Source: Saccostrea cucullata (Eukaryota). Taken from it: DNA of 64,000 nt. The notes under the pieces were generated by a model that worked only from the letters and a program-made list of their open reading frames with translations, was not told the origin of the DNA and searched no databases. Positions 29,030-62,593 of the stretch are shown in pieces (the first letter of the stretch is position 1; every line of letters begins with the position of its first letter). The stretch spans positions 1 through 64,000 of the forward strand of contig NW_026941175.1 of NCBI RefSeq assembly GCF_032062105.1. Direction: 5' to 3'. A program made the position numbers and the translations under genes.

Positions 29030-30941
29030 TCATTTTCCAATTACGCCTGGGTTCCCTGCATTGATACGTGAATATATGTAAAGTGCTGGGTTGTGACCTT
29101 CAGGTAGTGTGTAGTAATTCTGACCGTCAGCACTCCAACAAATTGCCTCACCAAGTCCTGCATTATGATAGGGAACTTCAACGGGTGTCTTAGTCAGCGA
29201 GTTCATCACGTCACCGCCATCAATCTTCCAGTAAAAGATGTTGGATTTTGTTTTGATGAGGAGTTCGCTACCGTCCATGGAAATATCGCCAGAGACTGGG
29301 TCGTGGTGGTGGGTATGAATAGGAAGAAACTGGGTTGTATCAATATTGACTATGTTAGGACTTCCCCACGCACTCTTTGGGAGATGGGAGACCATTCCAC
29401 GTCCGCTGTATATATTTCCTACCAGGTAGACCTCCCCTTGAGGATCGACCATCAGCGTCTGCGATTCGTCCTCTGACCATCTTATGGAGAAAGTTTACTT
29501 GTAGATATTTAATTTTTCAACTGAGGATTGGGGTTTATAAATTAATTTTATTGGTATGAGCATAATTAACAAAAATACATAAAAGTAAATAATTTAGCGT
29601 TAAATTATACCATGCTTTGCTTTACTTCCTTATGTATCTTTCTACATTTAAATCATTTACTTGTACATTGTATCTGTAAGCTTTACAGTCAAAAGAAAAG
29701 ATAACTCTGTTTTACTTTATATGTCTTTTGAATGACTTTTGAAAAGCAAAAATAAAAATATGCAAACATAGGTCATGCTTTATTCTTACGTGTATCGGGC
29801 GGTGGAATCGAGGGGTAGAACTTGATCCATGTTCATATTCATAACATCGGGCTCGAGCACTCTATAGATTGTGTTGGCGGATGTGGAATGTCTGTTACCA
29901 GAGTCGGCAATGTAAATGCAACTAGAATCTCCACACGGACCTACTGCAATGTCCTCCCAGTCATGATTCGTGGCATTAGCAATCCTCAATGTCGCGATCA
30001 GAGCCCCGGATGTTGCGTTTATAGCGTAGATATTAGGGCCACCTGCTCCGTCGTTGTGGGTGTATAGGACATTTTTGAATGTTCGGCTGGCTGCTAGCCC
30101 GGATGCATCGCTTAGGTTTCGGAAGATGACATGAGCCACAAGTTTACCAGCAGCAAATGCTGGAACTAAAAAATTTCATCGGACATCTTTTTGATATCAC
30201 TTGGAGGAATCTAACATTATTATAATGTAATCTTTACATGCCACACTAGTAATAAACTAATGTCGAACATTCAAGGAATTTAAATACTGAATGAAAATTT
30301 AAAATTCAGAAAAGGGAAACATGTGCTCTTGAATTTCTTATTTAATCATTTCTTGCAATTCATGTTAGGTTAATGTAACAGCGTAATTTTATGCTGAATG
30401 CCTATCTTTATTTTTTTTTTTCAATATTGTGTAAACAACGTTAAGTCTTTGAGATTTGAAATCTGGCCTAATTTTTGACTTCTATTGTCAAGCTCAAATC
30501 CGTCAGAGCACATCTGAGTTTATGCATTTCAACAATGTTTAAAACAAGGGTAAAACTTTCCAACCTCTTGAATTTTGAATAAAATCTAAATTTAGGCTTA
30601 ATTGTTCATATATTGAACAAAATGAAGAATAAGTTTCTCTTACAGTCATTTTACTTTTACAAAAAAATATGATTTTTACACAATACAAATTTTCTCTTAA
30701 GAACGAAAGTAATACGCGAGGGCCTGAATTGTAGACACTTTATTAAGATTTCTTTTGATGAGAAGAAGAAAAAGAACAATTCATGTCAAAACATGTTTAA
30801 AAAATACATATTTTTAAAGAATATGATGAAAACAACAATTACATTAATCAATAGTTTACCTTCTAATTGGTCTATGGCCTGTCGTTTCAGTGCCAGTGAC
30901 GCTGTAATGCTCAGCAACAGACAAAGAAACACGCCGGCCAT
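29030..30941 (-). CDS. Secreted DWEDIA-motif (bacterial-like, predicted beta-propeller) protein, copy 1, 300 aa
   Basis: Exons 30941-30860 (signal MAGVFLCLLLSITASLALKRQAIDQLE), 30159-29790 (..DASGLAASRTFKNVLYTHNDG..DWEDIAVGPCGDSSCIYIADSG..) and 29480-29030 (WSEDESQTLMVDPQG..VSGDISMDG..GEAICWSADGQNYYTLPEG..GVIGK*). Phase 1 and 2 introns, open frame. Confidence 0.9.
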
Positions 30942-31179
30942 GTTTGTGTCGGTAGAATCGTGCAAAGATAACGGGGACCTTGACCTTGTCAGAGATTTGT
31001 ATATCATAACGGTCACGATGGAATATACTGTTATAAAGTTATCAACTTGAAGCTAGTCAGGCAAGAGAGCTAGACGTTTTGTTGTTTAAAACAATAATAT
31101 GTGTTGTGTTTTTACTAAACCACATCTTTCAAATATTGTATGTTTGTCCTCTCCCGATTTAAGGTAAAAATGAAATTTA

Positions 31180-31585
31180 AAACAAGAGGCCCAGGGGCAA
31201 AATCGCTCACATGAGCACTGGCTACGAAAAAAAAAACACAAAACTTAGATCGACCATTGTTGCCCCACCCTACTAATAATGTTCAGGTTTCGGACAATCT
31301 TAAATACACTCCACCTGAGGATGCTTCGATATAAAAAAAAACAATCATAGCTTTGCTATTCTTGTGACGAAGATTTTAAGAGATTATCCCAATACATCCC
31401 TATGTGAAAATTAGATCGCCCATTGTGGTCCCCGACCTACTCCCGGAGTAAATGATTTGAAGAAACTTGAATCTACACCTCATATAAAAATGACAAATCA
31501 TGACTTTGTTGTTTTGATCAGACGATTTTTAAAGATTATCCCTACACATTTCTATGTAAAAGCCTAAAGATCAGGTGAGCTAAAA
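31180..31585 (-). mobile_element. Degenerate HINE with Cg170-like monomers upstream of copy 1
   Basis: AACAAGAGGCCCAGGGGC..CGCTCAC.TGAGC start, ~2 eroded monomers (CTTGAATCTACAC, ACCTGAGGATG) and TCAGGTGAGCTAAAA end. Same family as 43104-44570. Confidence 0.75.
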
Positions 31586-31791
31586 TAGATGATCGAAAGG
31601 TAGGAAGGTTTAATTCTTTAACAAATAGATTAATGATGGGATAATAGAGGACAAAATATATTCATCGTTTTCTGATGATCAACAAAGATTTGAAAAGGAC
31701 CATCAATCTGGATAGGGCAAACGATCATTTTTTAAGATGGCCCAAACTTCAACAACGCGTTTTCATGTAAAGTCTAGCATAAAAAAATAAG

Positions 31792-32539
31792 TACTGTAAA
31801 ACGAGAATATTTGGCGCACTACTTATTTTAGCCCCTTTGGTGCAAGAGCCCCTGAGCGCTAAAATTTATTCTGGGCTAAAGGATTTCTTAATATCATTTT
31901 TTGTGTGTGTTGAAAGCTTTTACATAAGAACATGTAAACCGGAACACGCGATTACGTAATGTCGAAGGGTCACTAGTACTGCACATGTTCGGAAGACAGA
32001 AAGTTCTGTCAAATTATAATTTAATTAAATTATTGTTACCCCAGTAGTTGTTACACGATTATTATCATTAGCAACTTCATAGTTTGGATTCTCGGCGTGT
32101 CAATCATCTATCGCCTCGAGGTAAACAATACAATCAAGCATGGCGATTGAGCTTGCTGACAATACCTGATTAGGATTACCGTTTTATCAAAGTAATTTTC
32201 TGTCGATGCATGCATTGTTTTAATATGCTTTTAAATGAGTAAATACTCCATTTCTTTAAATAGAAAATGGAAATGAAATTAATATTTAATATTGTGCCAC
32301 GTCCTTGTGATAGCAACAGGTACAGCGGTAAAGTTAACGAATGTTTACTGATATACAGAAGTACTAATGTGTTTCCGTGCTTGACTAACCAAAAGGTCAA
32401 ATACGGGTGTGGATAAAAAAAATATCAAATTCATATATTTTACTGACAAGTGCAAGCGCTAAAATTTATTTGCGCTAATGCATTCCCACTTGCGTTTGCG
32501 CTAAAATATGTATGCGGCAAATTTTCTCGTTTTACAGTA
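31792..32539. mobile_element. TA-flanked non-autonomous DNA transposon (MITE), ~750 bp
   Basis: Near-perfect TIRs TACTGTAAAACGAGAATATTTG / CAAATTTTCTCGTTTTACAGTA and subterminal GCGCTAAAAT repeats. Confidence 0.85.
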
Positions 32540-32559
32540 TTTCGATAAGGTCCCAGAAA

Positions 32560-34660
32560 CTACAGTTTAAGTGCAGGGAAATAAAAAAGCGACAAAATCT
32601 TGAGTATTTTGTAAGATTCCCTGAAGTTGCAGAAGATACAACTCATTGAAGCATGGGGAGATCTGATCACTCTCCTTACTATAATTTGTTTTTGTTCAAA
32701 GCTCTCTTTCTCTTTCTTTTAGTTCCAAGCTCTTTCTCTCTCTCTCCTTCTCTCTCTATCTCTCTCTCAAATTAGGTCTAAATCTTTAAGGGTATTAAGT
32801 CATTGTCATGAAAGAGCCAATACAAAGAGAAACTAGACATACACTGAATAGAATACCGGCGTAAAAATAGATTTATGTTCACTTGACAAATGGTCAATAA
32901 AGGGTCTATGATTGACAACAATAAATATTTGCATATCAGCAGATTGTTGGATTAATCTACATTTGTCCCATAATAGAAAATTGTGGATGTTTACGGTATG
33001 ACATGCATATGTAGGCCAAATTAATAAACTTATTGAACTGATAAAATCAATATAATTATGAAGTCAACTGGATAGATCACTTTTCCCCCACTTTCTCACA
33101 AAGTAGAAGTAAAACGTATAAAAGGATCCATTAGGTTTATTTTTCAGGAACAGGAATTTTACTAATTTTTGTCCCACTCCAGGGGTAAGGGGTATATGTA
33201 ATCATTCGAAAAAAAAAATAAGGTGAATGTGCACAATGAAATGATAAGAAGAATTATGCTTGCGGAAAACAAGTATTGATAAGTTTGATAAATTAATGTC
33301 AAATTGAATCAATGTCAATTGCACATATTTAAACAGACGAGTGTTCCTAATATGAACAACACTTGAGATTTTAAACTAACGCGTACTTGTGCATCTACTT
33401 TGACGTACACGTACACGCTTTTAGTAATTTGTTTGTTGATATTTTTATAATGTATATCATGTACGAGTACACCGTAATCGGAGTCTCAGTAACAACATTT
33501 CAATTTTGTTACGTCATGCTGATTTTATGCATTCAACGAAACACGATTAAAATAAGTGCTCATGAAACTAAACGTCTTAAATAATATACAACAACTACAT
33601 TTCACATAAATTGACCTATTTAATTATCAAAGCTACACGTTTTTCTTACGTTTAGATGCCATTCTACAGGTTCTAAAGACGTATAGAAAACTTGTCATCA
33701 CTAAAATTGATGACGTTATACGCGAGGAATTTAGGTAATTCAATTATAAGACGTATCTGTACACGTACACTTATGAAATTTCAACCTCTCAATTCTACTC
33801 AAGAGATTTTGATAATATTTTTTACAATATCTACTGTTATATTTATTGTTTTAAGATTTAAAAAAAACGAATGTGCACCATCCTGATTTCTTAGGGGCAT
33901 CTCAAAAGTTATCAAATTTAAGAATTGGACCCTATGGGAATTTTTTTGTCAAAAAGCGTCAGCGTTTCACATTTTCCCAATATTTTTTGGTATTTCTGAC
34001 TAAGGAATTTCTTTTGCAATCAAGTAAAAGAAAATTACAATAAAAAAGTGACCAATTGGTAAAAGTTTATCACCTAGGTTGGTCTAGGAATTCATAATTA
34101 ACTTTTCATTTTATAAAGGCTAATACCTCTAAAATTGCCATATTACGGTATAAATACATATCAGTGCAGATAAATTATCGGTGCATACGATTTTTTCGAA
34201 AAAAAATAGCAATGTTTAGATTTCTAATGCGTTTATTTGGATGTTCTGTCATCAGTTTTAAGAACAAAATCCATCTTGAACATACAAGCAAGCCATGCGT
34301 CATTCTTTAGCGACATACATTGTTTAGAAAATTGGAAAATTGTGGAGTTGTTAGAGCCGTTTTAGCGGGGTTTTTTTTACAATCATATTGTCGTGAAATC
34401 ACATTTGCAAACCAGTAGGAATTCCAGATAATGTTATTTTTGTATTAAAATCAAAACATTCAGCAAAGGTGTTCTCTTTGCACAAAGGACAACATGAATT
34501 TAAAAAAAAAAAAAAAAAAAAAAGCTGCGCATAGTTATGCACACTCAAATTAGACTGGGCCTAGTTAATATCTTTAATTCGTAATATTTTCATTTTGAAG
34601 AATAAAGACTGCTATGTACATGTGCTTAAGTTGAATAAATGGAAAGCAATAGGAACATAA
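32560..34660. repeat. 3' flanking block of the tandem duplication unit (homologous to ~42470-45990 and ~55670-56840)
   Basis: Shared anchors TTATGTTCAC.TG.CA, ACTAATTTTT..CCCAC, GAATGTGCACA.TGAAATGATA, AATTGG.CCCT.TGGGAA.TTT and CATCTTGAACA occur in all three blocks in the same order. Confidence 0.8.
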
Positions 34661-34663
34661 CTG

Positions 34664-37600
34664 TCACTTTCCGATAAGATTTCCAACTATATCCGGACTT
34701 CTAGTATTATTCCGGGTATATATGTAAAGTGGTGGATTGTGACCTTCGGGCAGTGTGTAGTAATTCTGACCGTCAGCACTCCAACAAACTGCCTGTGAGT
34801 CACCATTTCCTTCATAATGATAGGGAACTTCAACGGGTGTCGTAGTCAATGATCCCAATACGTCACTGCCCTCAATTCTCCAGTAAAAGATGTGGTATTT
34901 TGATTTGATAAGGAGTTTGCTACCGTCCATGGAAATATCGCCAGAGACTGGGTCATGGTGGTCGGTATTAATGGGAAGAAACTGTGATGAATCAATATTG
35001 ACTGGGTTAGGGCTTCCCCACGCGCTTTTTGGGAGATGGGAGACCATTCCACGCCCGCTGCATACATACCCTATAAGGTAGACCTCCCCTTTGGGATCGA
35101 CCATCAACGTCTCTGATTGCTCCTCCGACCATCTTAAGTAAAAAAAAATAATTATCATTATTTGAATTCTATTTTAAGATTTACGTTTAGAAATTAAATA
35201 ACCTGATTAAAAACACGTACACTTAAATAAAGAAACCATATATATGTAATACCATTGTATGCTTAACTTTCTAATATCTCTTGCTATATCATTTACATTT
35301 AAGATGTAATGTCTTTGATTTATACTGAATATTATCAGCAATGCATCTTACTTCAAACAAGCGTATCTTTTGACTCTTTTTGAATCTTTTAGTTTTACAG
35401 CTGTATTGTCAAAATGGAATCATTTTTTGTTGAAAATGACTTATTTTGCTTTTAATTGCCTCATTTCTGAATGAGATAAGGTTAAAAGATAACTTTAACT
35501 GAATATACGCCTTTTTCTGGAATAACTTTATAAAAGAAATAGGTAATTGAAATATACAAACAGATGTCAATCTTTTTTCTCACGTGTATTGAGCAATAGA
35601 ATCGAGGGGTAGATCTTGATCCATGCTCCTGATAATGAAATCGGGCTCAAGCACTCTGTAAATTGTGTTGGCTGATGATTTGGAATGATAATTCTGGCCA
35701 GAGTCAGCAATGTAAATACAGGTAGAGTTTCCACACGGACCAACAGCAATATCCTCCCAATCATGGTTCTTGGCATTTGCAATCCTAAATGTCGCGATCA
35801 GAGACCCAGATGTTTCGTTTATTGCGTAGATATAGGGGCCCCCGCCTCCATCACTGTGGGTGTAAAGGACATTTTTGAATTTTCGACTGGCTGCTAGTCC
35901 GGATGCATCGTCAAGGTCTTTGAAGATGACATGACCCACAAGTTTACCAGCAGCAAAATCTAGGAGTTATCAAAATCCTACTTTAATAATTTATGGCAAA
36001 GTATTTTTCACCGTTCTGACAATAAACTTTTCCAACAAATGTTAATTCATTTTTTTTATTTTTATGTTCCCCAAACGAAGTTGGGGAACATATTGTTTTT
36101 ACTCTGTTTTTTATTATTATTATTCTTATTTTTCTTCCTGGGAAAATTTTGTCCGCGAGTGATCTTGTAAACTACACATCAGACTAAGGTGAAATGTTTT
36201 TAGGGTCAGTAGACATGTAATGTAGATTTGCGGAACGAAGGTCATTTTCGGCGCACGTGCTTGCAAGAGCGCGCACGTGCAACATGATAAATGACCGATT
36301 ACATTGATATAGATGTAACTTTTTAAATTTTTGATGAAATGCTTTAGAACTCATAATATAAGGATACATTAGAAGTATAGACAATACGACATGGTCAAAA
36401 TAGCAAGATCTCACGCGCATGCACGTGCGCTGCACTCTGATTGGCTGAAACAAAAATCTCAATATCTTTTTTGTCTTTTGACGAAATGCTTTGAAATTTT
36501 GATTATAGCCATGCATTAGGATATCCTACAATATGATATATGGCAATTATCATGAAAACACGTGCATGCACGTGCGCTGCAATCTGATTGGCTTAAACTT
36601 TAAATAGCTATAACTCATTTGGATTTCAACCAAAGACGATGGGATTTGAAATATAGATAGAAATTATGAACTACTACAAGAAGGTATGGTAACCATGCAC
36701 ATGGATACACGTGCATGTACGTGCGCTGCAATCTGATTGGCTGAAACTTTAAACAGCTATAACTCCCTTGGTTTCCAACCAAACAGGATGTGATTTGGAA
36801 CATAGATAGATATAATGGACTACTACAAGAAAGGTATGGTCACCATGCACATGCGCACGTGCGTGTACGTGCGCTGCAATCTAATTGGCTGAAACTTTTA
36901 ACAGGTATAACGCCCTTGGTTTTCAACTATATGGGGTGGGATTTAGAACATAGATAGATGTAATGATCTTCTACAAGAAGGTATGGTCACCGTGCTCATG
37001 TATGCACGTGCGTGCACGTGAAATGAACAAAATCAAAAATACACTTGAATGAACGTAGTTTTATTACTTTTGGATTAAATACTTTAATTTTTAGTTTATT
37101 AAAATATATGGATTGTGTAGACAAAATGATATGGTCATTACGCACAGGCATTCGCATGCCCACGCATGCAATGCTAAAATTTGAATGAACTTCGTACACT
37201 TCCAGGTAAATGTTAAAGTCTCAAAAACATAGAGTTTGTCTTATTTAATGAAGCTTACAGGTAATATGGCACAAAAAGAGAGTTGGGGAGCGTTTGGGGA
37301 ACATCTGTAACGGTTCCCGTTACGATTAGCACTAGTTAGAATTGTTTTGTATAGTTAACATTTAGTCTTTGAGACTGAACACCTTGCCTAGTTTCTAAAC
37401 TTTTATTGTACACATAAGTATTTATACCTAAGCGCAAATCTGAAGCCATGCATAATAACAATGTATCTCTAAAAGGTTAATCTAACCAACCTTTTGCTTT
37501 TTTAAAAATGTTATCTTAGGTTTAATGTTCATATATAGAAGATTTTTTTTATTTACTTTTATACTAGTTTAATAAAAAAAAAACACAAAAAACCCCCCAA

Positions 37601-37867
37601 AATATTATTTTTGCACATTAGAAAATAACTCTTAATAGCGAATATTGAGATGATGGCAAACCCTTTTTAAAGATTGTATAGCTGAGAGAAAAAGGAATTA
37701 TTCATATTAAAATATGTAAAAAGTACACAATTCCAAAGATTATGAAATAAAAACATTCTTTCAATTAATTCAATGAATTATTTACCCTCTGAATTGTCTA
37801 TTGCCTGACACCTCAGCGCCAATGAGACTGCGATGCTCAGTAGCAGACAAAGATACACGTCGGCCAT
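34664..37867 (-). CDS. Secreted DWEDIA-motif protein, copy 2, 308 aa
   Basis: Exons 37867-37786 (MADVYLCLLLSIAVSLALRCQAIDNSE), 35959-35584 and 35132-34664 (..PDIVGNLIGK*). Same intron positions and phases as copy 1, open frame. Confidence 0.9.
36061..37337 (+). mobile_element. Non-autonomous Helentron/Helitron-type element with internal ~148-bp tandem repeats, in intron 1 of copy 2
   Basis: 5' hairpin ATGTTCCCCAAACGAAGTTGGGGAACAT, 3' sub-TIR GGGGAACAT plus hairpin GTAACGGTTCCCGTTAC and CTAGTT end. ACGTGCGCTGCA.TCT.ATTGGCT repeats near 36421, 36568, 36718 and 36866. Absent from the same T-tract in copies 3 and 4. Confidence 0.85.
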
Positions 37868-45994: not shown

Positions 45995-47874
45995 TCAGAT
46001 TTCCAACTAAATCCGGACTCCCCGTATCATTCCGGGTATAGATGTAAACTGGTGGGTTGTGACCCAACAGACAGAGTGTAGTAATTCTGACCGTCAGCAC
46101 TCCAACAAACTGTCTGTGAGTCACCAGTTCCTTCATAATGATATGGAACTTAAGCGGGTGCCGTAGTCAGTGACCCCAAGACGTCACCGCCCTCAATCTT
46201 CCAGTAAAAGATGTGGTATTTTATTTGATAAGGAGTTCACCACCGTCCATTGAAATATCACCAGAGGTTGGGTCGTGATGATCAGTAAGAATGGGAAGAA
46301 ACTGTTATGAATCAATATTGAATGGGTAAGGGCTTCCCCACGCACTCTTTTGGAGGTGGGAGACCATTCCATGCCCACTGCCTACATACCCTATAAGGTA
46401 AACTTCCCCTTTGGGATCGACCATCAACGTCTCTGATTGCTCCTTCGACCATCTTTAAAAAATAATTATCATCATTTGAATTCTATTTGAAAATTTACGT
46501 TTAGAAATTAAATAAACTTATTCAAAACACGTAAACTTAAATAAATAAACCCTATATATGTAATATCATGGTATACTCAACTTTCTTATATCTCATTTAG
46601 GATGTAATATCTATGATTTATACTGAATATTATCAGCGTTCCATCTTACTTCAAAGAAAAGTCACTTTTGACTCTTTTTGAATCCTTTAGCTTTACAGCT
46701 GCATTGTCAAAATGAAATCATTTTATGTTGAAAATTACTATTTCTGCTTTAAATTGGGTCATTCTGAATGAAATAAGGTTAAAAGATAACTCTGACTGAA
46801 TATACATCTTTTTCTGGAAAAACCTTTTACAAGAAATTATGAAAATAATACAAGCAGAAGTCAATCTTTATTCTCACATGTATCAAGCAGTAGAATCGAG
46901 GGGTAGAACTTGATCCATGTGCCTGATAATGAAATCGGGCTTGAGCACTCTGTAAATTGTGTTGGCTGGTTTGGAACCTCTGGCGCCAGAGTCAGCAATG
47001 TAAATACAGCTAGAGTTTCCACACGGACCGACGGCAATATCCTCCCAATCATGGTTCTTGGCATTCATAATCTTAAAGTCGCGATTATAGACCCGGATGT
47101 TTCGTTTATTGCGTAGATATGGGGGCCCCTGTCTCCATCGTTGTGGGTGTATAGGACATTTATGAATGTCCGGATGGCTGCGAGTTCTGATTAGTCGGTA
47201 AGTTCTCGGAAGTTTATATAAGCCACAAGCTTACCAGCAGCAAAATCTGGGTGTAAAAAATTCTATTTTAAATTTCCTGCAATGTATTTTACATAGTTCT
47301 ATCAGTACACTTTTCTGACAAATACTAATTCATATTTTTTTTTTCAAATTCCAAGAATTGTTGTGTCGTTAAAGTTAATTATTTGAGACTGGAAATCTGC
47401 CTACCGGTAGTTTCCAGACTATTGTTGTCCAGCTCAAATCCCTAAGAGCACATCTTCATTTATGCATTCCAACAATGTTTTTTTAAGTGGTTAATCTAAC
47501 CAACCTTTTGCTTTTTTTATAAATGTTAACTTCGGCTAAATGGTTCATATATATTTTTGAAGTCTTTCTTACACTATTTTTTTTTAAACAAAATGTTATT
47601 TATAAAATGTTATATAGAAATTTTCTCTTAATAGCGAAAAGTCTTAGGTAATGGCCTCAATTACAAACAACTTTGAAAGATTTCTATTGCTGAGCAAAAA
47701 AGGAAACATTCCTATCAAAATATGTAAACGTGCATAATTCCATAGATTATGAAAAAAAAACATTCTTTCAATTTATTTATTCAGTTATTTACCCCCTAAA
47801 TTGTCTTTTGCCTGTCGTCTAAGTGCCAGTGACGCTGTAATGCTCAGTAGCAGACAAAGACAAAAGCTTGATAT
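45995..47874 (-). pseudogene. DWEDIA-motif protein copy 3, pseudogene
   Basis: Exons 47874-47793, 47246-46878 and 46452-~45995 align with the other copies. Lesions: start ATG>ATA, TAA at 47193-47191, a 1-nt frameshift near 47070, TGA at 46885-46883 and TAA at 46307-46305. Confidence 0.9.
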
Positions 47875-51789: not shown

Positions 51790-51834
51790 TTAGGCCTATA
51801 TCTTTAAAGAAATTTAGCCATTATCATGGAGAAG

Positions 51835-52565: not shown

Positions 52566-53949
52566 GCATTAGATAAGGATAAGGCTTGATAACTTTGCTT
52601 ACTTTGAGTTTTTTATTTCAAACTCTCTCTCTCTCTCTCTCTCTCCGCAGAATTGTTAAGGCTTGAAAAAGGGAGCGGGACCTAATTTATACGGGAAATG
52701 TTTACTGTGATTTTACATTGTTTACATTGGATTTAATGTATTACTCATAAAACCAGAAAATGAAATAATTTGCAACTTTAAACAGTATTACCATAATACA
52801 CAACATTAAAACGTATAAAAAATGCATTAAAAAAGTTGGTGGTTAAATCTCATACAGCTGGTTATAAACAAATCACTGATCTCGATGAACTTGTCGACAT
52901 GACGTCATTTTGGTAGAAATGACGTATTTCATGTGCTGTGAGAGGCAGATTGAGGTATTTTTTTAACAATAAAAAATGCGTTTTATTATTAGACCGAATA
53001 TTATTTACGGGTTATAAATAAGCTATTAATGCAAATGTATAGCCTCTGTTTAGTGTTTTTTTTTTCATTAAAGCTATATATGCCGTATTAGTGTTTTATT
53101 TTAAAAGTAATAAATATATGTGGTGTCTTATCAAGTTATATAAGTTATATACCTTCTGCAAATAAGACAATTTCCCTCCATCACTTTTAAAAGTTATGAA
53201 ATATTATTTGGTAAAAATTACTTTCTTTCCGTGTCGGATAAAAAACCGCCTCTTATTGAAATATTCATGATCACGTTGTCTCGCATGTTTACAGCAAACA
53301 ATGGTCCAATCTCGTGAATGAACCGAAAAGCATGATGGTCTACTACGATATTACTACAAACACGTGAGTTAGGGATTGTCAATATTGAGAGCACCTCAGA
53401 GTTGGTTACTTTTTGTACGGAGGAATAATCACGTGCAATTGTCTTTTCAATGGACATTTTCGGTTGGGTGAACTTCTACAGATGTCAGCGACTATGGATA
53501 AAGAAGTGTGGAAACCATGTTGTGCCAAAATGAAATAACTAATACAAACAAATGATATTATTTGATCAATCAAAATGGTTATTAGATACATTCGATTCTG
53601 CATTTCTTAATGGTTCAAAACAACAAAAAGTATTCCATAGAATATCATGTATAAATCTGCACAATATACCGAATGCCAAAACCAGAATACTACTAAATAA
53701 TATAAATATATTCTTTACATATGAACCACAGTATTTCTGACCCCTCGAAAATAATATAAAAAATCTTGCAAGTAGGTTATCAGCATTGGCTCGGGCTAAT
53801 TCGAAAGTGAAATTTGAAGTTTGGCAGTAAATTGTAGTGAATGAATAAAATTTAGTCATATTTAGTAGTGAAAGATATTGGAACCTATTTTACTTGTCAG
53901 ATTTCTTCGAGCTAGTTGATTTTTATTCTAACTGTTTTATCCCCCACCC

Positions 53950-54135
53950 CTCGGATGAGACCGTATAAACCAAGGCCCCGTGTCGCAGTAGGTGCTGGCA
54001 CGAAAAAGATCCCTCCCTGCTCAATGGCCCTAAGTGCCGAGTTTAGGACAAAATTTGCAGCTCTCCACCGGCAAATGGTGGCGTCTCCATATGAGTAAAA
54101 AATTCTCGAGAGGGACGTTAAACAATAAATCAATC
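53950..54135 (+). mobile_element. 5'-truncated SINE (Meta-domain type)
   Basis: GGCCCCGTGTCGCAGTAGGTGCTGGCACGAAAAAGATCCCTCCCTGCTCAATGGCC core and GGGACGTTAAACAATAAATCAATC tail. Confidence 0.7.
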
Positions 54136-55127
54136 TATTCCCCCACCCACTTTAAAAAAAGCCCGATGCTACCTACCTGAATTAATTTTTCTTAAAGGTG
54201 TTAATCGTATTGCTTGGTTGTGCCCTCAAACTGGAATAGTTTTTAGAGGCCTGGAATTCCTTGACCAATTTTATTTTATTAGCCCAACTATATTTCTAAG
54301 AAGGCAAGATGTATGGTATGTAAGTTTCATCTACATATGTTATGTAGTTCATATTAGAAAACCAAATGGGATAATTGACGATATCCCATTCACGGTGTAA
54401 ACATAGCAATTTAAATTACTTTCCATACATTGTACTTGACATAAAATATTTTTTTGCGCATAATGCGCTCCATACTGAAGATCTGTAAATGTTCACCCAT
54501 CCACTAGCAGTACAGCACGGGGAAACTCTAAACAAACGGACCTGTACAATGGAGTGGGGAAAACTTTAATTTTCATCATTGTTAATCATTTGTATGCAAA
54601 TATGAGCATGGGATTAGTAGATAAAAATGTACATAATGCATCAAGTCTTTCTGAGAGCGATTTAAAAAACTAGCCTTTTTGAAAAACACATGTAGTATTT
54701 TATGTAGTAACCCATAAATGCATTAAATGCAACTCATTGAGCTGATTGGTCTACTTGTGTCCCTCACTGAACAGACGTCACAAAATATATTTTCCTCGAC
54801 CTGGCTATGATTCTCTCGATGCTTTTCCCGCGTACATGCGCAGATCCAGGATAAACGTCGATCCTTTATAAATATGCATGAGAATATCGTGTTCTTTTCC
54901 TGACCAGTACTTTGTTAATACCGAATAAAATTTCGTCGAATTTGCAAGAATGCTTCATTTTTGGTAGTTTATCACACTCCAGAAATTTTTGTTCGGTTTC
55001 AGCTGTGCACAAATACTATTTAACACGGCATACATATCTTTAACTATCGAAAGAATGTATTTAATTAATTTTGTCGTGTTTCTATGCACAGGTTAGGAAT
55101 ATTTTACATCAAGATGCCTCATTAAAT

Positions 55128-55172
<45 letters not shown>

Positions 55173-56844
55173 ATGGGCATACACTAAATTCATCTTAACA
55201 ATTTTTTGTATTCAATTAAAGGATATTTTCCTTAACTTGAAAAGTGCTGCTGCTTTTTTTAAATCGAGAGCTCGACTTAATAAGTACACACAATATTTGG
55301 TAAAAGTCAGACATATTTCGACATGGTCCTATTTACTTGAAATTTTAATTATAAAAACGTGAATTCTATTCAAAGCATCAGCACTTGCAAGAAAGTATAA
55401 AGTATGCAAAAATATTTAATAGCATGAATTTTTAATTTCAACTAGGGTATGCCCTAGCGATATTGAAATTTGTTATTGACCTACAATTAGTACACGTAGT
55501 ATGTATTCACCACGTGACTGTCCATCGATGGGACCAAACTTCATACAGTACAGAGTAGGTTATACTAGGCTATTTCCATAAGTGTTTGACTTCTGTGACG
55601 ATAAAACAGCTTAAGAAAAATAAATTCAGTTTAAATTAAAACACTTCACATACACTCCATAACATATTAAAACGGATTTATGTTCACCTGACAGCAATTA
55701 ATATTTGTATATCAGAAGAGTATTGAATTAATTTAAGTTTGTCCTATAATAAAGATTGTGGATGTATAATTATTAAGTTAACTAAATGGATCACTTTTCC
55801 CCCACTTTTCACAAAGATGAAGCAAAACGTATAAAACAATACGTTAGTTTTATTTTTGAGGCATTCTACTAATTTTTTCCCACATTAGGAGTAAGGGGTA
55901 ACCATTGGAAGAAAATTTCTGTGAATGTGCACAATGAAATGATATGGACAATTATGCTTGAGGATAACAAGTATTCTGTGATGTCAATGTCAATTGCACA
56001 TACATTGTATTTAGACAGTGTTCCTAATATGAGCAACACTTTCAATTTAACGAGGCGCAGTCCAATTATTTCTGCACAAGGGATTTTTATAATTTTTTTT
56101 ACAATTATTTTTTCTGTTATATTCATTGTTTTAAGATTAAAAAATCAAAAGTATACATTCCTATTTTTGGAGACATCTCAAAAGGTATCAAATTTAACAA
56201 TTGGACCCTGTGGGAATTTTTCAAAAAGCTCCAAAGTATCACATTTTCACCAAATTTTTGGTGTTTCTGCCTTAGGAATTTTGTTATTCATTCAAGTAGA
56301 TAAAATTAATAGTATAAAGTGACCAAAGTTTAAAATTTTTCATCTAGGTTGGTCTGTGAATTAATTACTAAGATTATCTTTTCAAAGCCCAATATCTCTA
56401 AAATTGCGATATAATATATTAAAACATATTAGAGCAGAACAAATTATCAGCGCATGTGATTTTTTTTTTTTAAATAGCAATGTTTACATTTCGAATATCT
56501 TTATTTTGATGGTTTTTCATCAGTTTAAAGCATAATATCCATTGACATCTTGAACAAAGCGTCATATATTGTTTACAAAATCGGAAAATTGTGACGTCTA
56601 TAGAGCCATTTCAGCCTTTTTTTTTCTTTTTTCTTTTTTTTTATACATTTTTTGTCACGAAATCACATTTTCAGACAAGAGGGGTTACAGATAATGTTAT
56701 TTTTGTATCAAAATCAAAACATCCAGCAAAAGTATATTGTAATAGTTGATATTTTTAATTCGTAAAATTTTTATATTAAGGAGTAAACACTGCTATATAC
56801 AAGTGATAAACTAAAATAGATGAAAAGCAATGTGGAAATTACTG

Positions 56845-59800
56845 TCACTTTCCAATAAGATTTCCAACTATATCCGGACTCCCAGTATCATTCCGGGTAT
56901 AAATGTAAAGTGGTGGGTTGTGACCTTCAGGCAGTGTATAGTAATTCTGACCGTCAACACTCCAACAAATTGCCTCTCCAAGTCCTTCATCATGATATGG
57001 AACTTCAATAGGTGTCGCAGTCATTGACGTCAAGACGTCACCGCCCTTAATTTTCCAGTAAAAGATGTGGTATTTTGATTTGATAAGGAGTTCGCTACCG
57101 TCCATGGAAATATCGCCAGAGACTGGGTCGTTGTGATCAGTATGAATAGGAAGAAACTGGGATGAATCAATATTGACTGGGTTAGGGCTTCCCCACGCAC
57201 TCTTTGGGAGATTGGAAATCATTCCACGCCCGCTGCATATATATCCTATAAGGTATACCTCCCCTTTGGGATCGACCATCAACGTTCCTGATTCCTTCTC
57301 TGACCATCTGAAGGAGAAATGGCAATTATAATTTTTTTATTTTCATGTGGAGATTGACCATAAAAATTAAGGATTTAAATGTGTAATAAGCCACTTCCGG
57401 TTAAAATGCCGAGGTATTTGACATCGGCAGTTCTCGTAACATCTATCTTCGTAAACAAAATGGCGCGTCGTCAAGACGGCATAGGACGCTATCATAAAAC
57501 TTACACCAAAGGAACAGATTATAACTAATCAAAGGAAAGAATTGATATGATATTAAATAGAAAACACCTTACTATAATTTGGTTTTCAAAATATGCAGTC
57601 AAAACGATGTAATCTTCATATACACACTACACGGGGTTTTCCAACTTCTAAAATTAGCACCGATTTCGAAAAAAACAAACGAAGTAATTTTTCATTGTAA
57701 TTTTGTGATTCTCTTAACACCAGCTAACAGTTTGAGAAAATAATGTATGTAACAATATCAATAGCATTGCGTTTATTGTGGAATCTGCAATAAATCGACA
57801 GATGTTGCGTACATATAATCCCTACATAATGTAATATGCTGGAATTGTGCAAACCTGTGGCCGTGCTAAATGATTCTCAGGATTTGTGAAATATCAATGA
57901 TTTCTAGAAAAATAATTGACAAAACAGACTTAAGGTGGCTCATTACATCCACAGTTTATTTTAGATTTCAGTACAGCACCACTTATAATGTAGATGTCAA
58001 ATATCCAGATGGGGGTATTGTATCATAATTATTTTTTTATAGAATTTTTTAGTTTTTGTTTTATTTTTGTGAAATGTTTTATTTCAGGTTTATTATTCAC
58101 AGAATTTCAGAACTTTCAGTGTCAAATGATGGGCATCTTCTTCAGACAAGTACACACAGTTAAAATACCTCATTATACCAAAAATAATTTTATTAGAAAA
58201 AAAAATTTTCTCCTAGAAAACAGTTAATGTCATTATCTTTTTAATCTATGCATAGAACATTTAAAAAATGTGTTCTGAAGAGACAAGGAATGTATTTCAA
58301 TGAATTACATGTGTCAAATTGAATGAAGAAAGTTTAAACGAAATGAAAAATCGTATTTAAAAAATATTTGGTATAAAAAGTCCACTTTCAAGAGTTATCT
58401 TTCCTAATTAGCCAAGACTCAAAACACTATGGAACGTTTGACATTACATCTAAAATTCAGAATAAAGCTTTAAATTGCCAGAGTATACATTTAAATCAAT
58501 AAAACAAATATTTAAATCAATAAAACAAATATATAAATTAACACCAACACAGTAAATAGCGCAATTAAATAAAATTTTAATTTCAACAAGGTTGTAGATT
58601 TTAACTCGAATTTCCTCCATACATACATGTTAGTGATTGATAGAGTTCACTGCATGCATGGCTATGAAATTGACATTACTTGTTTGGCGAAGATTTGACT
58701 GTTGCCTTCTTTTGTTTCTGCCTAAAAGCAATTCTTCTTGGTCTATGCATAATGAATCCGTTACTTTGTTTTCACTGTTTACAACACCGCATGTTTCATC
58801 TATTTTTAAAGCGTTTTAAAGGTCAGGGTCATATTATAGAGGTACCTATACAACTCGTCCCCTGAGCAAACCGGTCGACACAATGGAGGTTTATTTTTTT
58901 GTGTAGTACGTCATCAAAAAGTGGTGTAATGAGCCTCCTTAAGATATCTAGATACTCATGCAACATACATTAATGTCACGTTCAATTGTCCATGTTATCA
59001 TACATGAAACATGTTGCGTGAAATATCTGAGATGATCAAATAGATAGATCAGTAAATAAATGTAAAAATATGTTTAGAACTTTAACAAAAAAATAATATC
59101 AGTTATGAGAACAAAAAAAATTCAGGGTGAATTTTATCTGTGTGGGTTTTTATTTACTTATTTTTTGCAAAAGTTTAGCCGCGTCGGAAAGAGGGGGGGG
59201 GGTAACATATTTATTTATACATATTTTATTAATTTATAATATATGTGAGGCACAATATCGTTTTTAAAACCCTTTGATCAGTGTTTTGCTATCAGTCAGA
59301 TATGTTTTAGCCTTCATTGTAAAGTAAATATAAACTATGAAGAACTTTTTACTTATGGGAACTGCAAAAATATAGTTTATTTTGTAAACTCTCGTCTGGG
59401 TTAAGGTCAATGTGAGAAGAGGTCAATTTTCTGAACAAATAAATCTAAAGTGAATTGAGTTGAGTATGACAATCATCTTTTGTTTATATATGCTCAAGCT
59501 CATTAGTTCATTCATTACAACCTATGTACCCTATACCACGAACAAAAAAAAAAATAATGGCTTACATTTCAGAGGGTACATCACTCTGATGTAGAATATA
59601 GATAAATATTGTGGATAGAATAATTCTTTTTTGTGGTTATATTATCACAAATACATGTCACACAAAATTTACTATGTTTTCTTGAACATCCCAACAATAT
59701 TTTTCTTTGGCAGAATAATGTAAACGGTTTTATAACAACATATTGCTAAAATTGTCAAAGAAATCAGACAGGTTCTCTCGATTACAAGTATTCATTTATC

Positions 59801-62593
59801 ATAATTAATGACTTCGAACTAAAAAAAATTGAATGTCTACAATCCTAGGGCTTATTTTTACAGTTAAATACATGAAACGTTAAACTGTTCTCTGGCTAAC
59901 TAGAAAAATTACAACTCTACCCTTTGTTCATTAAGTGTGCACCACTGGCGAGAGGGTACAGTTATATAAATGAGCACATAAGAAATATGTATGGACAAAA
60001 TTGCATGAAACTAAGGGAAATATTACCGAAAGTGCTGTTCATTATAACTATGCTTAATTAAGTCATATTCAAGGTCATGGCTATTACACCCCTAATACCT
60101 TAAATGAACTAATTAAAAACACGTTAACTCTATACGTAATTTCCACATGGTAATAATTCTGCGGAATCACATCAATTTGATCAGCGGGTAAAAATTACGC
60201 GGATTCTTTCAGTGCCAAAAATTATATATTGTACACTACACTGTATAAATAAGAAGAAAATGGTATTATCTACCTAAAATTTGTCTGCCTTAGGAACATA
60301 GGTTTTTTTCAAAGAACAGCATTCAAATGACTCGGGTCAACATACATGTACGTATGCGGTACCTTCCCGCCAGCTCATAAATTTCGACTTATGAAATAAT
60401 TCTTGAGGTTTACATACATCAAATTCAAATAAACTTTTTAAAAAAGAATGAATTCCATAAACACATACTTTAGACGTACATCTACAATTATCAGCACTGA
60501 GGTCAAGTCATGTGAGGTGGCTGATCAACGCACACCTGTTCATTCAAACAGAAGCTTGGGAAAATCGGTGAATCTTACACGAGTAAAAAAGCCAAACAAT
60601 TTTCTCTTTGGCCTGAAAGTGTGCTGCCATGTGTAAATGTAATTTTTCAGAAGTTAATGTAAATGATTTTTATGACATGTTATATGCGTGCCTTTAGTTT
60701 TTTAAATGAAATATTTAAAGCAAATGAATATTTTAAACTTGATTTCGAGCTAACATGTCATTAACAATTCAATTAATTATACCAGTTAAAACATAAGGGG
60801 ATCTGGAAAAACTGCAGCAAAACACGGGTCTTGGCGATTCTATAATTGGATGATTGACACATATCCTCTTAAGGACAAGTCCTTGTGGCACGTGCCGTTA
60901 TCTCTAACTAGGAGTTGAAGATCAAATTTGAGGCAAGGATATTTATAAATGTATGCCGGAGAAATTATTTTTCAAAGAATCGAAATTATTATTTTGTGAA
61001 TTCTTAAAACTTCTTTGCATTATTTACGGTGTGTGGATATCAAAAATATATATGCATAGAAGATATATTTAACATGCATGTAGACCTATACCTACACAAG
61101 TCGTATCTAATAACGTATTACTTTTTTCTTATATTCTCATTCATTTAGTGCAATGTCATTCCTAAATGCACTTTAAGTACGTTGTGATAAGTTTCCGCGG
61201 AAAAATGATGTTCACGTTCATAGCGTAAATTAATCCCACACAGATAAAAGTACATGAACACTATATAAACCCTATATGTGTAATGCACTGATCTGCTTAA
61301 CTTTCTCATATCTCTTGCTATATCATTTACATATAGGATGTAATGTCAATGATTTATACTAAATACAATCAACATTGGATCTTACTTCAAAAAAAGGTGT
61401 CTTATGAATCTTTGGAATCTTTTTGCTGTACTGCTGAATAGTCAAAATGAAATCTTTTTTAGTTGAAGATGGCTATTTTGCTTTTAATTAAATCATTTAT
61501 GAATGAAATAAAGTTAAAAGGTAAATCTGACTGACTACACGTCTTTCTCTAGAATATCGCTTTAAAAGATATAATGAAAATTTACCAAAATAAGTCATGT
61601 TTTTTCTTACGTGTATCGAGCAGTGGAATCGAGGGGTAAAACTTGATCCATATTCCTAATAATGAAATCGGGCTCTAGCACTCTGTATATTGTGTTTTTT
61701 GGAGTTGAATGTTTTTTGCCAGAATCAGCAATGTAAATACAACTGGAATTTCCACACGGACCGACAGCAATATCCTCCCAATCATGATTCTTGGCATTTG
61801 CAATTCTTAATGAAGCGATCAGAGCCCCGGATGTTGCGTTTATTGCGTAGATATAGGGACCCCCGTTTCCATCGTTGTGGGTGTATAGGACATTCTTGAA
61901 TTTTCGGCTGGCTGCTAGTCCGGATGCATCCGTTAGGTCTTCGAAGATGACACGAGCCACAAGTTTTCCAGCAACAAAATCTAGATGTAAAAAAAATTCC
62001 AATTTTAATAATGTCTTGCAATGTATTTTACTCCGTTCTAACAATAAACTTTTCTTACAAATGCTAATTCATATTTTTTTATTTCAATTCCAAGAATTGT
62101 TGTGTCGTTATCTTTAAATATTTGAGAATGGAAATCTTGCCAAGTTTCTAAACTACTATTGTCCAGCACAAATCCCTAAGAGCAAATCTGATTTTTTGCA
62201 TCAAAACAATGTTTTTAATGTTTTTTTTTTATTTAAATATTAAGTTAATCTTAATTGTTCATATATTGAAGATTTAAAAAAAAATCTAGTTTAGTTAAAA
62301 AAAGAACAAAATATAATTTTTACACTGTAGAAATTTTCTTTTAATAGCAAATGTTTTAGGTGAGGGCCTTAATTGCAAACACTTTTTAATGATTTCTATT
62401 TCTGAGAGAAAAAGAAACATTCAGCTGCATCTCAAAATACGTAAAAAGTACATAATTCCAAAGATTATGAAAATAAAAACATTCTTTCAATTAATTAAAT
62501 CAGTTAATTACCTTCCGAATTGTCTATTGTCTGACGTTTCAGTGCCAGTGACGCTGTAATGCTCAGTAGCAGACAAAGATACACGCCGGCCAT
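56845..62593 (-). CDS. Secreted DWEDIA-motif protein, copy 4, 304 aa
   Basis: Exons 62593-62512 (MAGVYLCLLLSITASLALKRQTIDNSE), 61980-61611 and 57307-56845 (WSEKESGTLMVDPKG..PDIVGNLIGK*). Open frame; intron 2 is expanded to 4.3 kb by insertions. Confidence 0.88.
57371..60099. mobile_element. TTAA-flanked non-autonomous DNA transposon (Kolobok-like) in intron 2 of copy 4
   Basis: TTAA at 57367-57370 and 60100-60103, imperfect TIRs GGATTTAAATGTGTAATAAGCCA / TGGCTATTACACCCCTAATACC. Flanks rejoin to the uninterrupted AAATTAAAT..ATT.AAAACACGT of copies 2 and 3. Confidence 0.75.
57934..58938. mobile_element. Nested TTAA-flanked Kolobok-like MITE (~1 kb)
   Basis: TTAA|GGTGGCTCATTACATCCAC ... GTGGTGTAATGAGCCTCC|TTAA. 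Confidence 0.8.
60130..61265. mobile_element. Further ~1.1-kb insertion in intron 2 of copy 4 (degenerate MITE-like)
   Basis: Lies between AAAACACGTTAACT and TAAACCCTATAT, which are only ~10 bp apart in copy 3. Subterminal CGCGGA/CCGCGG motifs at both ends. Confidence 0.5.

What the first reader, a model, noticed from the sequence alone, without database searches (positions are those of the whole stretch)
29030..62593. Tandem array of four secreted bacterial-like DWEDIA proteins: candidate horizontally acquired, intron-bearing, expanding family
Seen: four paralogues with identical 3-exon structure (82-nt signal-peptide exon, phase 1 and 2 introns), three with open frames. From recall: the motif series SGLAAS / THND.G / DWEDIAVGPC / IYIAD.G / TLMVDP / GDIS.DG / GEAI.W matches an uncharacterised secreted protein family that I know mainly from bacteria (Actinobacteria, Bacteroidetes). 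It is predicted to be a beta-propeller with acidic, possibly Ca-binding or catalytic residues. Inference: an ancient bacteria-to-animal transfer, or patchy retention, domesticated as a secreted mollusc protein and now in birth-and-death expansion. Spliceosomal introns and bivalve-type TEs argue against contamination. The function is unknown. This is the best candidate for an undescribed system in the window.
Basis: partly seen in the sequence, partly recalled or inferred. Interest (0 to 1): 0.8.

Follow-up and report, generated by a model that had tools for sequence, protein, structure and literature searches.

The report
Bacterial-type secreted propeller genes in oyster
The window holds part of a tandem array of real, intron-bearing oyster genes for a secreted five-bladed propeller protein of unknown function, found so far only in bivalves, gastropods and thousands of bacteria, so an ancient bacteria-to-mollusc gene transfer is the most likely origin.

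Summary
There are four minus-strand paralogues: three are intact and one is a pseudogene. Each has an 82-nt signal-peptide exon and GT-AG introns of phase 1 and phase 2. The genome is Saccostrea cucullata. The intact copies are NCBI models LOC134257347, LOC134257345 and LOC134257346, all named "uncharacterized protein". The array continues beyond the window to at least eight copies.

No Pfam, NCBIfam or PDB sequence match exists. An AlphaFold model (pLDDT 81) is a five-bladed propeller. It is closest to the E. coli YjiK C-terminal domain, an SdiA-regulated family protein (Z 19.9), and to bacterial glutaminyl cyclases (Z 19.2 and 17.6).

An exhaustive HMMER search finds 9,566 representative clusters. 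Every named eukaryotic hit is a bivalve or a gastropod. The rest are bacteria, mainly Bacteroidota/Cytophagales, at about 30-37% identity. A careful ML tree separates 40 mollusc-side rows from 69 bacterial-side rows by one branch (96/84). No donor is resolved.

dN/dS is 0.17-0.30 and dS is 0.3-1.0, so the duplicates are old and under constraint.

The oyster array has lost several residues that are near-invariant in bacteria and kept in slower mollusc paralogues. This suggests a shift in function.

Ancient transfer is well supported but not proven, because other animal phyla could not be searched exhaustively. The function is unknown.

The parts
29030..30941 (-). Copy A, intact gene (NCBI LOC134257347, 302 aa). 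Exon 1 is 30860-30941, exon 2 is 29790-30165 and exon 3 is 29030-29480 including the stop.
   Evidence: The protein P0007 maps exactly onto the three exons with GT-AG introns. tblastn hits.
34664..37867 (-). Copy B, intact gene (LOC134257345, 308 aa). Exon 1 is 37786-37867, exon 2 is 35584-35959 and exon 3 is 34664-35132.
   Evidence: P0009 maps exactly. An RNA-run contig joins 35132 to 35584, skipping 451 nt with GT..AG ends on the minus strand.
36062..37338 (.). A dispersed repeat or insertion of about 1.28 kb inside intron 1 of copy B. It includes a 149-bp tandem repeat at 36559-37020. Copies A, C and D lack it.
   Evidence: The homology between copies breaks here. TRF row. RNA-run depth is very high, with loose ends at 36062 and 37337/8.
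45996..47874 (-). Copy C, a pseudogene. The exon 1 remnant is about 47800-47874 and its start codon is now ATA. The exon 2 remnant (46880-47226) has a frameshift plus TGA and TAA stops. The exon 3 remnant (45996-46472) has several stops.
56845..62593 (-). Copy D, intact gene (LOC134257346, 304 aa). Exon 1 is 62512-62593, exon 2 is 61611-61980 and exon 3 is 56845-57307.
   Evidence: P0008 maps exactly. Exon 1 was read directly.
57371..61266 (.). An insertion of about 3.9 kb that enlarges intron 2 of copy D. The ends of the intron are still homologous to copy B's 451-nt intron.
   Evidence: blastn of copy B against the window: B 36061-35233 matches D 62084-61267, and B 35197-34562 matches D 57370-56743. 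There is no ORF of 80 aa or more inside it.

Best explanation
These are bona fide Saccostrea cucullata genes.

SHOWN:
- They form a head-to-tail array of at least eight paralogues. Four lie in the window: three intact and one dead.
- Each encodes a protein of about 300 aa, with a cleavable-looking signal peptide on its own 82-nt exon followed by a single domain.
- AlphaFold models that domain as a five-bladed beta-propeller.
- The family has no Pfam or NCBIfam model.
- Its nearest solved folds are the E. coli YjiK C-terminal (SdiA-regulated) domain and bacterial glutaminyl cyclases. Its only recurrent weak Pfam signal is Phytase-like (PF13449).

INFERRED, about 0.7: the gene entered a shelled-mollusc (bivalve + gastropod) ancestor, or an earlier one, from a bacterium. 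It then gained a eukaryotic signal-peptide exon, spliceosomal introns, a mollusc-specific cysteine pair (GPCG..SC) and N-glycosylation sequons, and it duplicated repeatedly.

INFERRED, low confidence, on how it works: in the model's secondary structure, the strand that begins each blade carries one conserved acidic motif. These are EASGL, DWEDIA, D.ETL.VDP, GDIS and GEAI.W. If those strands face the central channel, as is usual in propellers, they would form an acidic, probably Ca2+-binding pocket that binds or hydrolyses an extracellular ligand. I favour a glycan or a phospho-ester.

The oyster array copies have replaced several residues that are near-invariant in bacteria and kept in slower mollusc paralogues. 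These are the GDIGDN loop, K175, Q262 and E45. I therefore think the array copies are more likely ligand binders than enzymes, for example recognition proteins in mucus or haemolymph.
For: Gene reality:
- Exact exon maps with GT-AG introns of phase 1 and phase 2.
- A spliced RNA contig.
- Full-length ORFs of the Magallana gigas orthologue on 1-1.8 kb Logan contigs, which are transcript-like.
- dN/dS of 0.17-0.30.

Array.

Fold:
- pLDDT 80.7 and pTM 0.81.
- 3qqz Z 19.9, 3mbr Z 19.2 and 3nok Z 17.6, against 14.8 for the next entry.
- ESM Atlas neighbours carry SdiA-regulated or Phytase-like families.
- Sub-threshold PF13449 hits in 4 of 29 mollusc and 5 of 60 bacterial members, and in Haliotis P0184.

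Origin:
- 9,566 clusters at E <= 1e-3.
- All named eukaryotic hits are Mollusca, from 10 bivalve and 3 gastropod genera.
- At least 586 loci in GTDB species genomes across Bacteroidota, Ignavibacteriota, Calditrichota, Gemmatimonadota, Planctomycetota, Myxococcota, Actinomycetota and others.
- Full-length collinear alignment at 29-33% identity.
- A single mollusc/bacteria branch with UFBoot 96 and SH-aLRT 84, present in 94% of bootstrap trees.
- Gastropod and bivalve sequences interleave in several subclades, so duplication predates their split.

Function leads:
- The table of conserved acidic residues.
- Extracellular fusion partners. Haliotis has WSC and Sushi. Bacteria have T9SS tails, dockerin, LTD, VWA, Calx-beta, Laminin_G_3 and PKD.
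Against: - The tree is only a bipartition. Molluscs are not nested inside a bacterial clade, so neither donor nor direction is shown phylogenetically.
- Absence from other animals and eukaryotes rests on the best 120-150 rows of two searches. Five sequences on the mollusc side come from unidentified samples (P0048, P0049, P0051, P0053, P0066). P0048 is a polyadenylation-signal-bearing transcript that lacks the mollusc cysteine pair.
- Some sequences on the bacterial side sit on eukaryote-like contigs. One has a MAM33 neighbour and one is a transcript-like contig.
- Expression of the window's own copies is barely seen. Exon 3 of copy B has 1-3x depth in two oligo-dT runs, and the spliced contig differs from the window at about 3-4% of sites.
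- There is no functional evidence. Bacterial gene neighbourhoods are not conserved, with at most 4 of 70 neighbours sharing a family. No paper was found.
- The geometry of the acidic ring is inferred from sequence and predicted strands, not measured on coordinates.
Confidence: 0.65

Rival explanations
1. Vertical descent with patchy retention. The family was present in early eukaryotes or animals and was lost almost everywhere except molluscs. Alternatively it persists in other phyla in forms too diverged, or in taxa too poorly sampled, to appear in the lists I could see.
For: - The tree shows only a mollusc/bacteria split and no nesting.
- Unidentified eukaryote-like transcripts lie at the base of the mollusc side (P0048, P0053).
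- A few eukaryote-like contigs carry members on the bacterial side.
- The family is old in molluscs and predates the bivalve/gastropod split.
Against: - No named non-mollusc eukaryote appears among the best 150 representatives of 1.84 billion proteins or the best 120 rows of the word search. Thirteen mollusc genera do appear.
- Bacterial diversity is enormous and spans many phyla.
- This explanation requires many independent losses.
Confidence: 0.17
2. Same origin, but the oyster proteins are still enzymes. They would be secreted Ca2+-dependent hydrolases, such as a phytase-like phosphoesterase or a glycoside-active five-bladed propeller, used in digestion or in processing microbial polymers.
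For: - The core acidic motifs are retained: DWED, ND, D.G, EP, DP, GDIS, EA and T.E.
- There are weak Phytase-like hits.
- Five-bladed GH43/GH62-type hydrolases share the fold at Z of about 14.
- Bacterial members are fused to dockerin, and one to Metallophos.
- The genes are under purifying selection.
Against: - The array clade has lost D116 and N117 (94-95% conserved in bacteria), K175 (94%), Q262 (79%) and E45 (97%). Slower mollusc paralogues from Dreissena, Mya and Sinanodonta keep them.
- No catalytic residues are defined for the family.
- The GH43-type similarity is fold-level only.
Confidence: 0.25
3. Contamination or assembly artefact. The bacterial-like ORFs would come from bacterial DNA co-assembled with the oyster.
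For: Only the bacterial-like sequence similarity.
Against: - Three-exon genes with GT-AG introns and a separate signal-peptide exon.
- A spliced RNA contig.
- GC content like that of host coding sequence.
- A 130-kb contig with host repeats.
- Homologues on chromosome-scale records of many molluscs.
Confidence: 0.01

Closest known systems
E. coli YjiK C-terminal domain (PDB 3qqz), Pfam PF06977 SdiA-regulated. This includes Pseudomonas aeruginosa CarP (PA0327), a Ca2+-regulated beta-propeller protein.
   Same: - It is the best structural match: Z 19.9, 227 residues aligned, rmsd 3.4.
- Both are five-bladed propellers of about 250 aa and both are exported.
- hhalign aligns blades 1-2 motif on motif, EASGL with EVSGL and N.DWEDI with NMDVEDV.
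- The nearest ESM Atlas clusters that carry a Pfam family are SdiA-regulated.
- According to the review PMC10574481, CarP homologues are annotated as SdiA-regulated domain proteins and affect Ca2+ homeostasis.
   Different: - Pfam membership fails. The best E-value is 0.15-0.2, far below the 21-bit cut-off.
- hhalign probability is only 12-14%.
- An Echinicola genome carries both a DWEDIA-family gene and a separate SdiA-regulated-like gene that the family HMM does not detect.
- Sequence identity is 15%.
Pfam PF13449 Phytase-like ('esterase-like activity of phytase')
   Same: It is the only Pfam family that recurs among weak hits. It appears in 4 of 29 mollusc members, 5 of 60 bacterial members and Haliotis P0184. 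The best hit is E 7.7e-5 at 23.2 bits. Both are propeller repeats rich in conserved Asp and Glu.
   Different: Every hit is below the 27.6-bit gathering score and covers only the first blade or two. The enzymatic activity of PF13449 is itself a prediction (my knowledge of the Pfam entry), not something tested here.
Bacterial/plant-type glutaminyl cyclases (PDB 3mbr, 3nok; Pfam PF05096)
   Same: Five-bladed propellers of the same size. Z is 19.2 and 17.6 over 219 residues.
   Different: No sequence signal to PF05096 appears in any scan. Identity is 8-12%. Cyclase catalytic residues were not compared.
Documented bacterium-to-animal gene transfers that became secreted, intron-bearing, duplicated animal genes, for example the centipede venom families in PMC7864903
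   Same: The gene is integrated in the host genome with introns and a eukaryotic signal peptide. It is under purifying selection and tandemly duplicated. Its eukaryotic range is restricted against a broad bacterial range.
   Different: This transfer would be much older, before the bivalve/gastropod split. No donor clade is resolved, and the function of both the donor and the recipient protein is unknown.

Membership tests
Pfam PF06977 SdiA-regulated (YjiK/CarP type) | HMM score at or above the gathering cut-off of 21 bits | tested here: not met
   The window's exons and full-length proteins give no hit. The best hit in the family is E 0.15-0.2 at about 12 bits.
Pfam PF06977 SdiA-regulated (YjiK/CarP type) | Five-bladed propeller fold like the YjiK C-terminal domain | tested here: met
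   3qqz_A gives Z 19.9 over 227 of 243 residues and is the top of 48,161 chains.
Pfam PF06977 SdiA-regulated (YjiK/CarP type) | Significant profile-profile homology | tested here: inconclusive
   hhalign against one SdiA-regulated-like ORF from Echinicola gives probability 12-14% and E 0.002, with only blades 1-2 aligned. No family alignment of PF06977 was available.
Pfam PF13449 Phytase-like | HMM score at or above the gathering cut-off of 27.6 bits | tested here: not met
   The best hit is 23.2 bits. Hits are recurrent but sub-threshold in 9 of 89 members plus P0184.
Plant/bacterial-type glutaminyl cyclase (PF05096) | Sequence match to the family, and the catalytic Glu | tested here: not met
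   No hmmscan hit at E <= 1. There is fold similarity only. The catalytic residue was not examined.
Bacterium-to-animal horizontally transferred gene | The gene is integrated in the host genome, shown by introns, host flanks and spliced RNA | tested here: met
Bacterium-to-animal horizontally transferred gene | Present in several related host species on large host scaffolds | tested here: met
   Thirteen mollusc genera, with records up to 281 Mb.
Bacterium-to-animal horizontally transferred gene | Absent from other animals and eukaryotes | tested here: inconclusive
   No named non-mollusc eukaryote appears in the best 150 and best 120 rows. Deeper rows could not be seen. Five rows on the mollusc side come from unidentified samples, and a few eukaryote-like contigs are on the bacterial side.
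Bacterium-to-animal horizontally transferred gene | The recipient clade is nested within donor diversity in a supported tree | tested here: inconclusive
   Molluscs form one side of a single branch (96/84). The tree is unrooted and no bacterial sister group is resolved.
Tandem gene array under birth-and-death evolution | Same-strand adjacent paralogues with both intact and decayed members | tested here: met
   Eight minus-strand copies lie on one contig. Copy C is decayed, and so is a copy at contig position 86.6-87.6 kb. dS is 0.3-1.0.

The most novel reading that the evidence does not exclude
A bacterial secreted five-bladed propeller was captured once by the ancestor of shelled molluscs. 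It became a mollusc-specific family of extracellular calcium- or glycan-binding proteins. In oysters, one branch lost the ancestral enzyme-like residues and expanded as a tandem array of recognition or matrix proteins, acting for example in mucosal immunity or in calcium handling at the shell-forming surface. This would make it a horizontally acquired contributor to a phylum-defining biology.
Probability: 0.15. Interest if true: 0.8.

Novelty: new variant of a known kind. Interest (0 to 1): 0.58.

Why it matters
If the transfer holds, this is one of the older and more widely retained bacterium-to-animal acquisitions. It would predate the bivalve/gastropod split, and it has been kept, duplicated and fused to animal domains (WSC, Sushi) in many lineages. 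It would also give an entry point to a very large bacterial protein family that has no Pfam model and no known function, with about 9,500 representative clusters. The oyster array sits next to slower paralogues that keep the full bacterial residue set. That offers a natural experiment on how an acquired protein changes function.

Tried and rejected
- Pfam and NCBIfam scans of single exons and full-length proteins found nothing above chance.
- Searching PDB by sequence and by profile gave only chance hits.
- Foldseek against PDB gave only generic WD40 propellers at TM of about 0.45, which is uninformative. The exhaustive VIA search was needed to find the close folds.
- The word search with a bare exon finds only ORF fragments, because of its length window. 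I got round this by using a longer fragment with a region setting.
- I looked for conserved neighbours of the bacterial genes. Seventy flanking ORFs from 35 loci share no family in more than 4 cases, and those reflect lineage synteny (DDAH, adenylosuccinate lyase, ClpB). So there is no operon clue. A first attempt with 138 ORFs exceeded the size limit.
- Literature searches for mollusc HGT reports, for the Magallana accessions, for the SRA run ids, for PE_PGRS propellers and for CarP found nothing on this family.
- UniProt's automatic names for members are 'Fucose-specific lectin', 'Dipeptidylpeptidase IV N-terminal domain' and 'PE-PGRS family protein'. None is supported by the fold ranking or by Pfam, so I treat them as generic propeller labels.
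- Midpoint rooting falls among the long Haliotis branches and is not meaningful.
I used NCBI's own protein models, which the protein search returned and which map exactly onto the exons. dN/dS was counted exon by exon.


Full report
**What is in the window**

tblastn with the two large exons of one copy finds four copies, all on the minus strand. Aligning the regions upstream of exon 2 shows a conserved 82-nt first exon. It reads ATG...GAAG followed by GTAA and encodes MAGVYLCLLLSITASLALKRQTIDNSE, which looks like a signal peptide.

The protein word search returned NCBI's own models from a 129,669-bp contig of Saccostrea cucullata. That length matches the contig holding the window. The models are:
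- P0007 = LOC134257347 = copy A
- P0009 = LOC134257345 = copy B
- P0008 = LOC134257346 = copy D

All three are called "uncharacterized protein". They map residue for residue onto three exons each, with GT-AG introns of phase 1 and phase 2.

Copy C has ATA in place of the start codon, a frameshift and several stops.

Copy D's second intron is 4.3 kb because of an insertion of about 3.9 kb. The ends of that intron still match copy B's 451-nt intron. Copy B's first intron carries a repeat of about 1.28 kb.

I did not build a joined spliced sequence for any search. The stored NCBI models served instead.

**The array is larger than reported**

Six-frame searches of the whole assembly show four more copies downstream on the same contig. 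Their exon 2 lies at 68.0, 77.3, 87.3 and 93.9 kb, and all are on the minus strand. The copy at 86.6-87.6 kb has a broken exon 3.

More divergent paralogues (39-61% identity) lie on contigs C16040/C11788, C21725 (two copies), C19422 and C19209. Some of these have extra introns but share the exon 2/exon 3 boundary.

Pairwise Nei-Gojobori counts were made exon by exon and summed. They give dN/dS of 0.17-0.30 and dS of 0.32-0.97 among five intact copies. The duplicates are therefore old and constrained. This is not a recent burst.

**Expression**

One call of read laying on copy B gave two results.
- A metatranscriptomic run carrying the same species label holds a 526-nt contig. It covers 35058-35132 and 35584-35961, skips exactly 451 nt, and the skipped stretch has GT..AG ends on the minus strand. 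It differs from the window at about 3-4% of sites, so it may be an allele or a close lineage.
- Two of three oligo-dT raw-read runs put only 1-3x depth on exon 3.

The Magallana gigas orthologue (LOC105320257, K1Q2A2) occurs as complete 300-aa ORFs on 1-1.8 kb Logan contigs, which look like transcripts.

The splicing model is therefore supported. Expression of the window's own copies is weakly documented.

**What the protein is**

Neither the exons nor the full-length proteins match any Pfam or NCBIfam model or any PDB sequence. The same is true of the bacterial homologues.

An AlphaFold2 model of copy B, built with an 11-row alignment, has pLDDT 80.7 and pTM 0.81. Its roughly 22 strands are arranged as five four-stranded blades after an N-terminal helix, which is the signal peptide.

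Foldseek gave only generic WD40 hits. The exhaustive aligner ranked these first:
- the E. coli YjiK C-terminal domain (3qqz, SdiA-regulated family) at Z 19.9
- bacterial glutaminyl cyclases at Z 19.2 (3mbr) and 17.6 (3nok)

These stand clearly above the next entry at 14.8. After that come five- and six-bladed propellers such as GH43 hydrolases, NHL domains and phage receptor-binding proteins.

ESM Atlas neighbours without a Pfam family are bacterial. The nearest neighbours that have a family carry SdiA-regulated or Phytase-like.

Relaxed scans show Phytase-like (PF13449) as the only recurrent weak hit, always below its cut-off. hhalign against an SdiA-regulated-like ORF from Echinicola aligns the first two blades motif on motif, but at only 12-14% probability.

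So this is a distinct, unmodelled family at the edge of the YjiK/Phytase-like propellers. Membership of those Pfam families was tested and not met.

**Who else has it**

The exhaustive HMMER search with a seven-sequence mollusc profile found the following numbers of representative clusters:
- 9,566 at E <= 1e-3
- 5,381 at E <= 1e-10
- 549 at E <= 1e-30

Cluster look-ups and the last word search named every eukaryotic hit as a mollusc.
- Bivalves: Saccostrea cucullata and S. echinata, Magallana, Pinctada, Mercenaria, Sinanodonta, Dreissena, Mya, Mactra, Ylistrum and Tegillarca.
- Gastropods: Haliotis, Gigantopelta and Biomphalaria.

In the profile word search, scores fall from 278-443 bits for the mollusc proteins with full-length domains to about 235-244 bits for the first unnamed rows, which look bacterial, and 222 bits for the first named bacterium. 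The named bacteria are mostly Cyclobacteriaceae such as Aquiflexum, Echinicola, Cecembia and Rhodonellum.

The best 80 are mainly Bacteroidota/Cytophagales. Ignavibacteriota, Calditrichota, Gemmatimonadota, Planctomycetota, Myxococcota, Actinomycetota, Fidelibacterota and Pseudomonadota also appear.

Oyster and bacterial proteins align end to end at 29-33% identity, and all motifs are shared.

**Phylogeny**

A FastTree of 165 domains gave a first view. A quick and then a completed careful IQ-TREE run followed, with 109 rows under LG+C20 PMSF. Both put all 40 mollusc-side rows on one side of a single branch and all 69 bacterial-side rows on the other. Support is UFBoot 96 and SH-aLRT 84, and 94% of bootstrap trees need only one change.

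Bivalve and gastropod sequences interleave in several subclades. The family had therefore already duplicated before those classes split.

The tree is unrooted and resolves no bacterial sister group. It is compatible with a single ancient transfer but does not prove it, and no donor can be named.

Caveats:
- Five rows on the mollusc side come from unidentified samples (P0048, P0049, P0051, P0053, P0066). P0048 is a 5'-truncated transcript with a polyadenylation signal that lacks the mollusc cysteine pair.
- A few rows on the bacterial side sit on eukaryote-like contigs.
- I could see only the best 120-150 hits.

**Clues to mechanism**

Across 172 bacterial and 35 mollusc domains the conserved residues fall in one motif per blade. 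In the model's secondary structure each motif lies on the strand that begins its blade.

| Blade | Motif |
|---|---|
| 1 | E-A-S-G-L, plus H-N-D-S-G on the next strand |
| 2 | D-W-E-D-I-A, plus Y..D-I-G-D-N |
| 3 | D.E-T-L..D-P |
| 4 | G-D-I-S..G |
| 5 | Q-G-E-A..W, plus T.S-E |

A ring of acids at the channel mouth is what metal-dependent propellers show. I infer this from sequence and predicted strands, not from coordinates.

Fusion partners are all extracellular.
- In Haliotis: WSC and Sushi.
- In bacteria: T9SS sorting tails, dockerin, PKD, LTD, VWA, Calx-beta, Laminin_G_3 and, in one protein, Metallophos.

Bacterial neighbourhoods are not conserved.

Molluscs add a Cys pair (C103 and C108, 89-91% conserved), W191 and P214.

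Slow mollusc paralogues (Dreissena, Mya, Sinanodonta, Mactra) keep almost the whole bacterial residue set. The oyster array clade has replaced E45, S65, D116, N117, K175 and Q262, and it varies at D158, E160 and E260. The replaced GDIGDN loop is also the low-confidence stretch of the model, at residues 117-122.

I read this as a shift in the array from an enzyme-like or metal-dependent ancestor toward a binding role. That reading is a hypothesis.

**Verdict**

- The bacterial-family recall is correct.
- Contamination is excluded.
- Ancient bacterium-to-mollusc transfer is the best explanation, at about 0.7.
- Patchy vertical retention is not excluded.
- The function is unknown. I favour an extracellular ligand- or Ca2+-binding propeller.
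- No paper on the family was found.

Noticed in passing
window:36062-37338: A repeat of about 1.28 kb in intron 1 of copy B has very high depth in RNA runs. Many reads join 37335/37338 back to 36062 ('goes back 1274-1277'). This suggests the element also exists as head-to-tail tandem or circular copies elsewhere. It contains a 149-bp tandem repeat at 36559-37020.
   Followed up: partly
window:43219-44311: A tandem array with a 166-bp unit and 6.6 copies at 88% match (it also reads as a 330-bp period) lies between copies B and C.
   Followed up: no
window:22762-23196 (-): A 144-aa ORF gives a sub-threshold C-type lectin hit (PF00059, E 0.0019, 19.4 bits against a cut-off of 22.6). It may be an exon of a lectin gene on the low-coordinate side of the array, about 6 kb below copy A.
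   Followed up: partly
G000:C23312:64001-100000 (loci L001-L004): Four more array copies lie beyond the window. NCBI's model P0011 joins an exon 1 at about 84.1 kb to an exon 2 at about 77.6 kb, which makes intron 1 roughly 6.4 kb. The copy at 86.6-87.6 kb has a frameshifted exon 3 with a TGA.
   Followed up: partly
L095 (ENA contig k119_3327) and L094 (Logan contig): The family members P0085 and P0056 fall on the bacterial side of the tree but sit on eukaryote-like sequence. P0085 has a MAM33-family neighbour, and its cluster relative P0096 has a weak, sub-threshold PAN-domain hit. P0056 is on a 2-kb transcript-like contig with GC3 of 0.74. They may be separate acquisitions by microbial eukaryotes.
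   Followed up: partly
L093 (Echinicola arenosa genome, G002:C14:503238-506426): The same bacterium carries a DWEDIA-family gene (L083) and a separate 288-aa SdiA-regulated-like lipoprotein with the motifs EVSGL and NMDVEDV. The family HMM does not detect the second gene. The two families are therefore distinct but share motifs.
   Followed up: yes
P0184, P0046, P0063 (Haliotis proteins): Abalones have fused the propeller to animal modules. One form has a WSC domain followed by two propellers in tandem, and another has Sushi repeats followed by one propeller. Double-propeller forms also occur in bacteria.
   Followed up: partly
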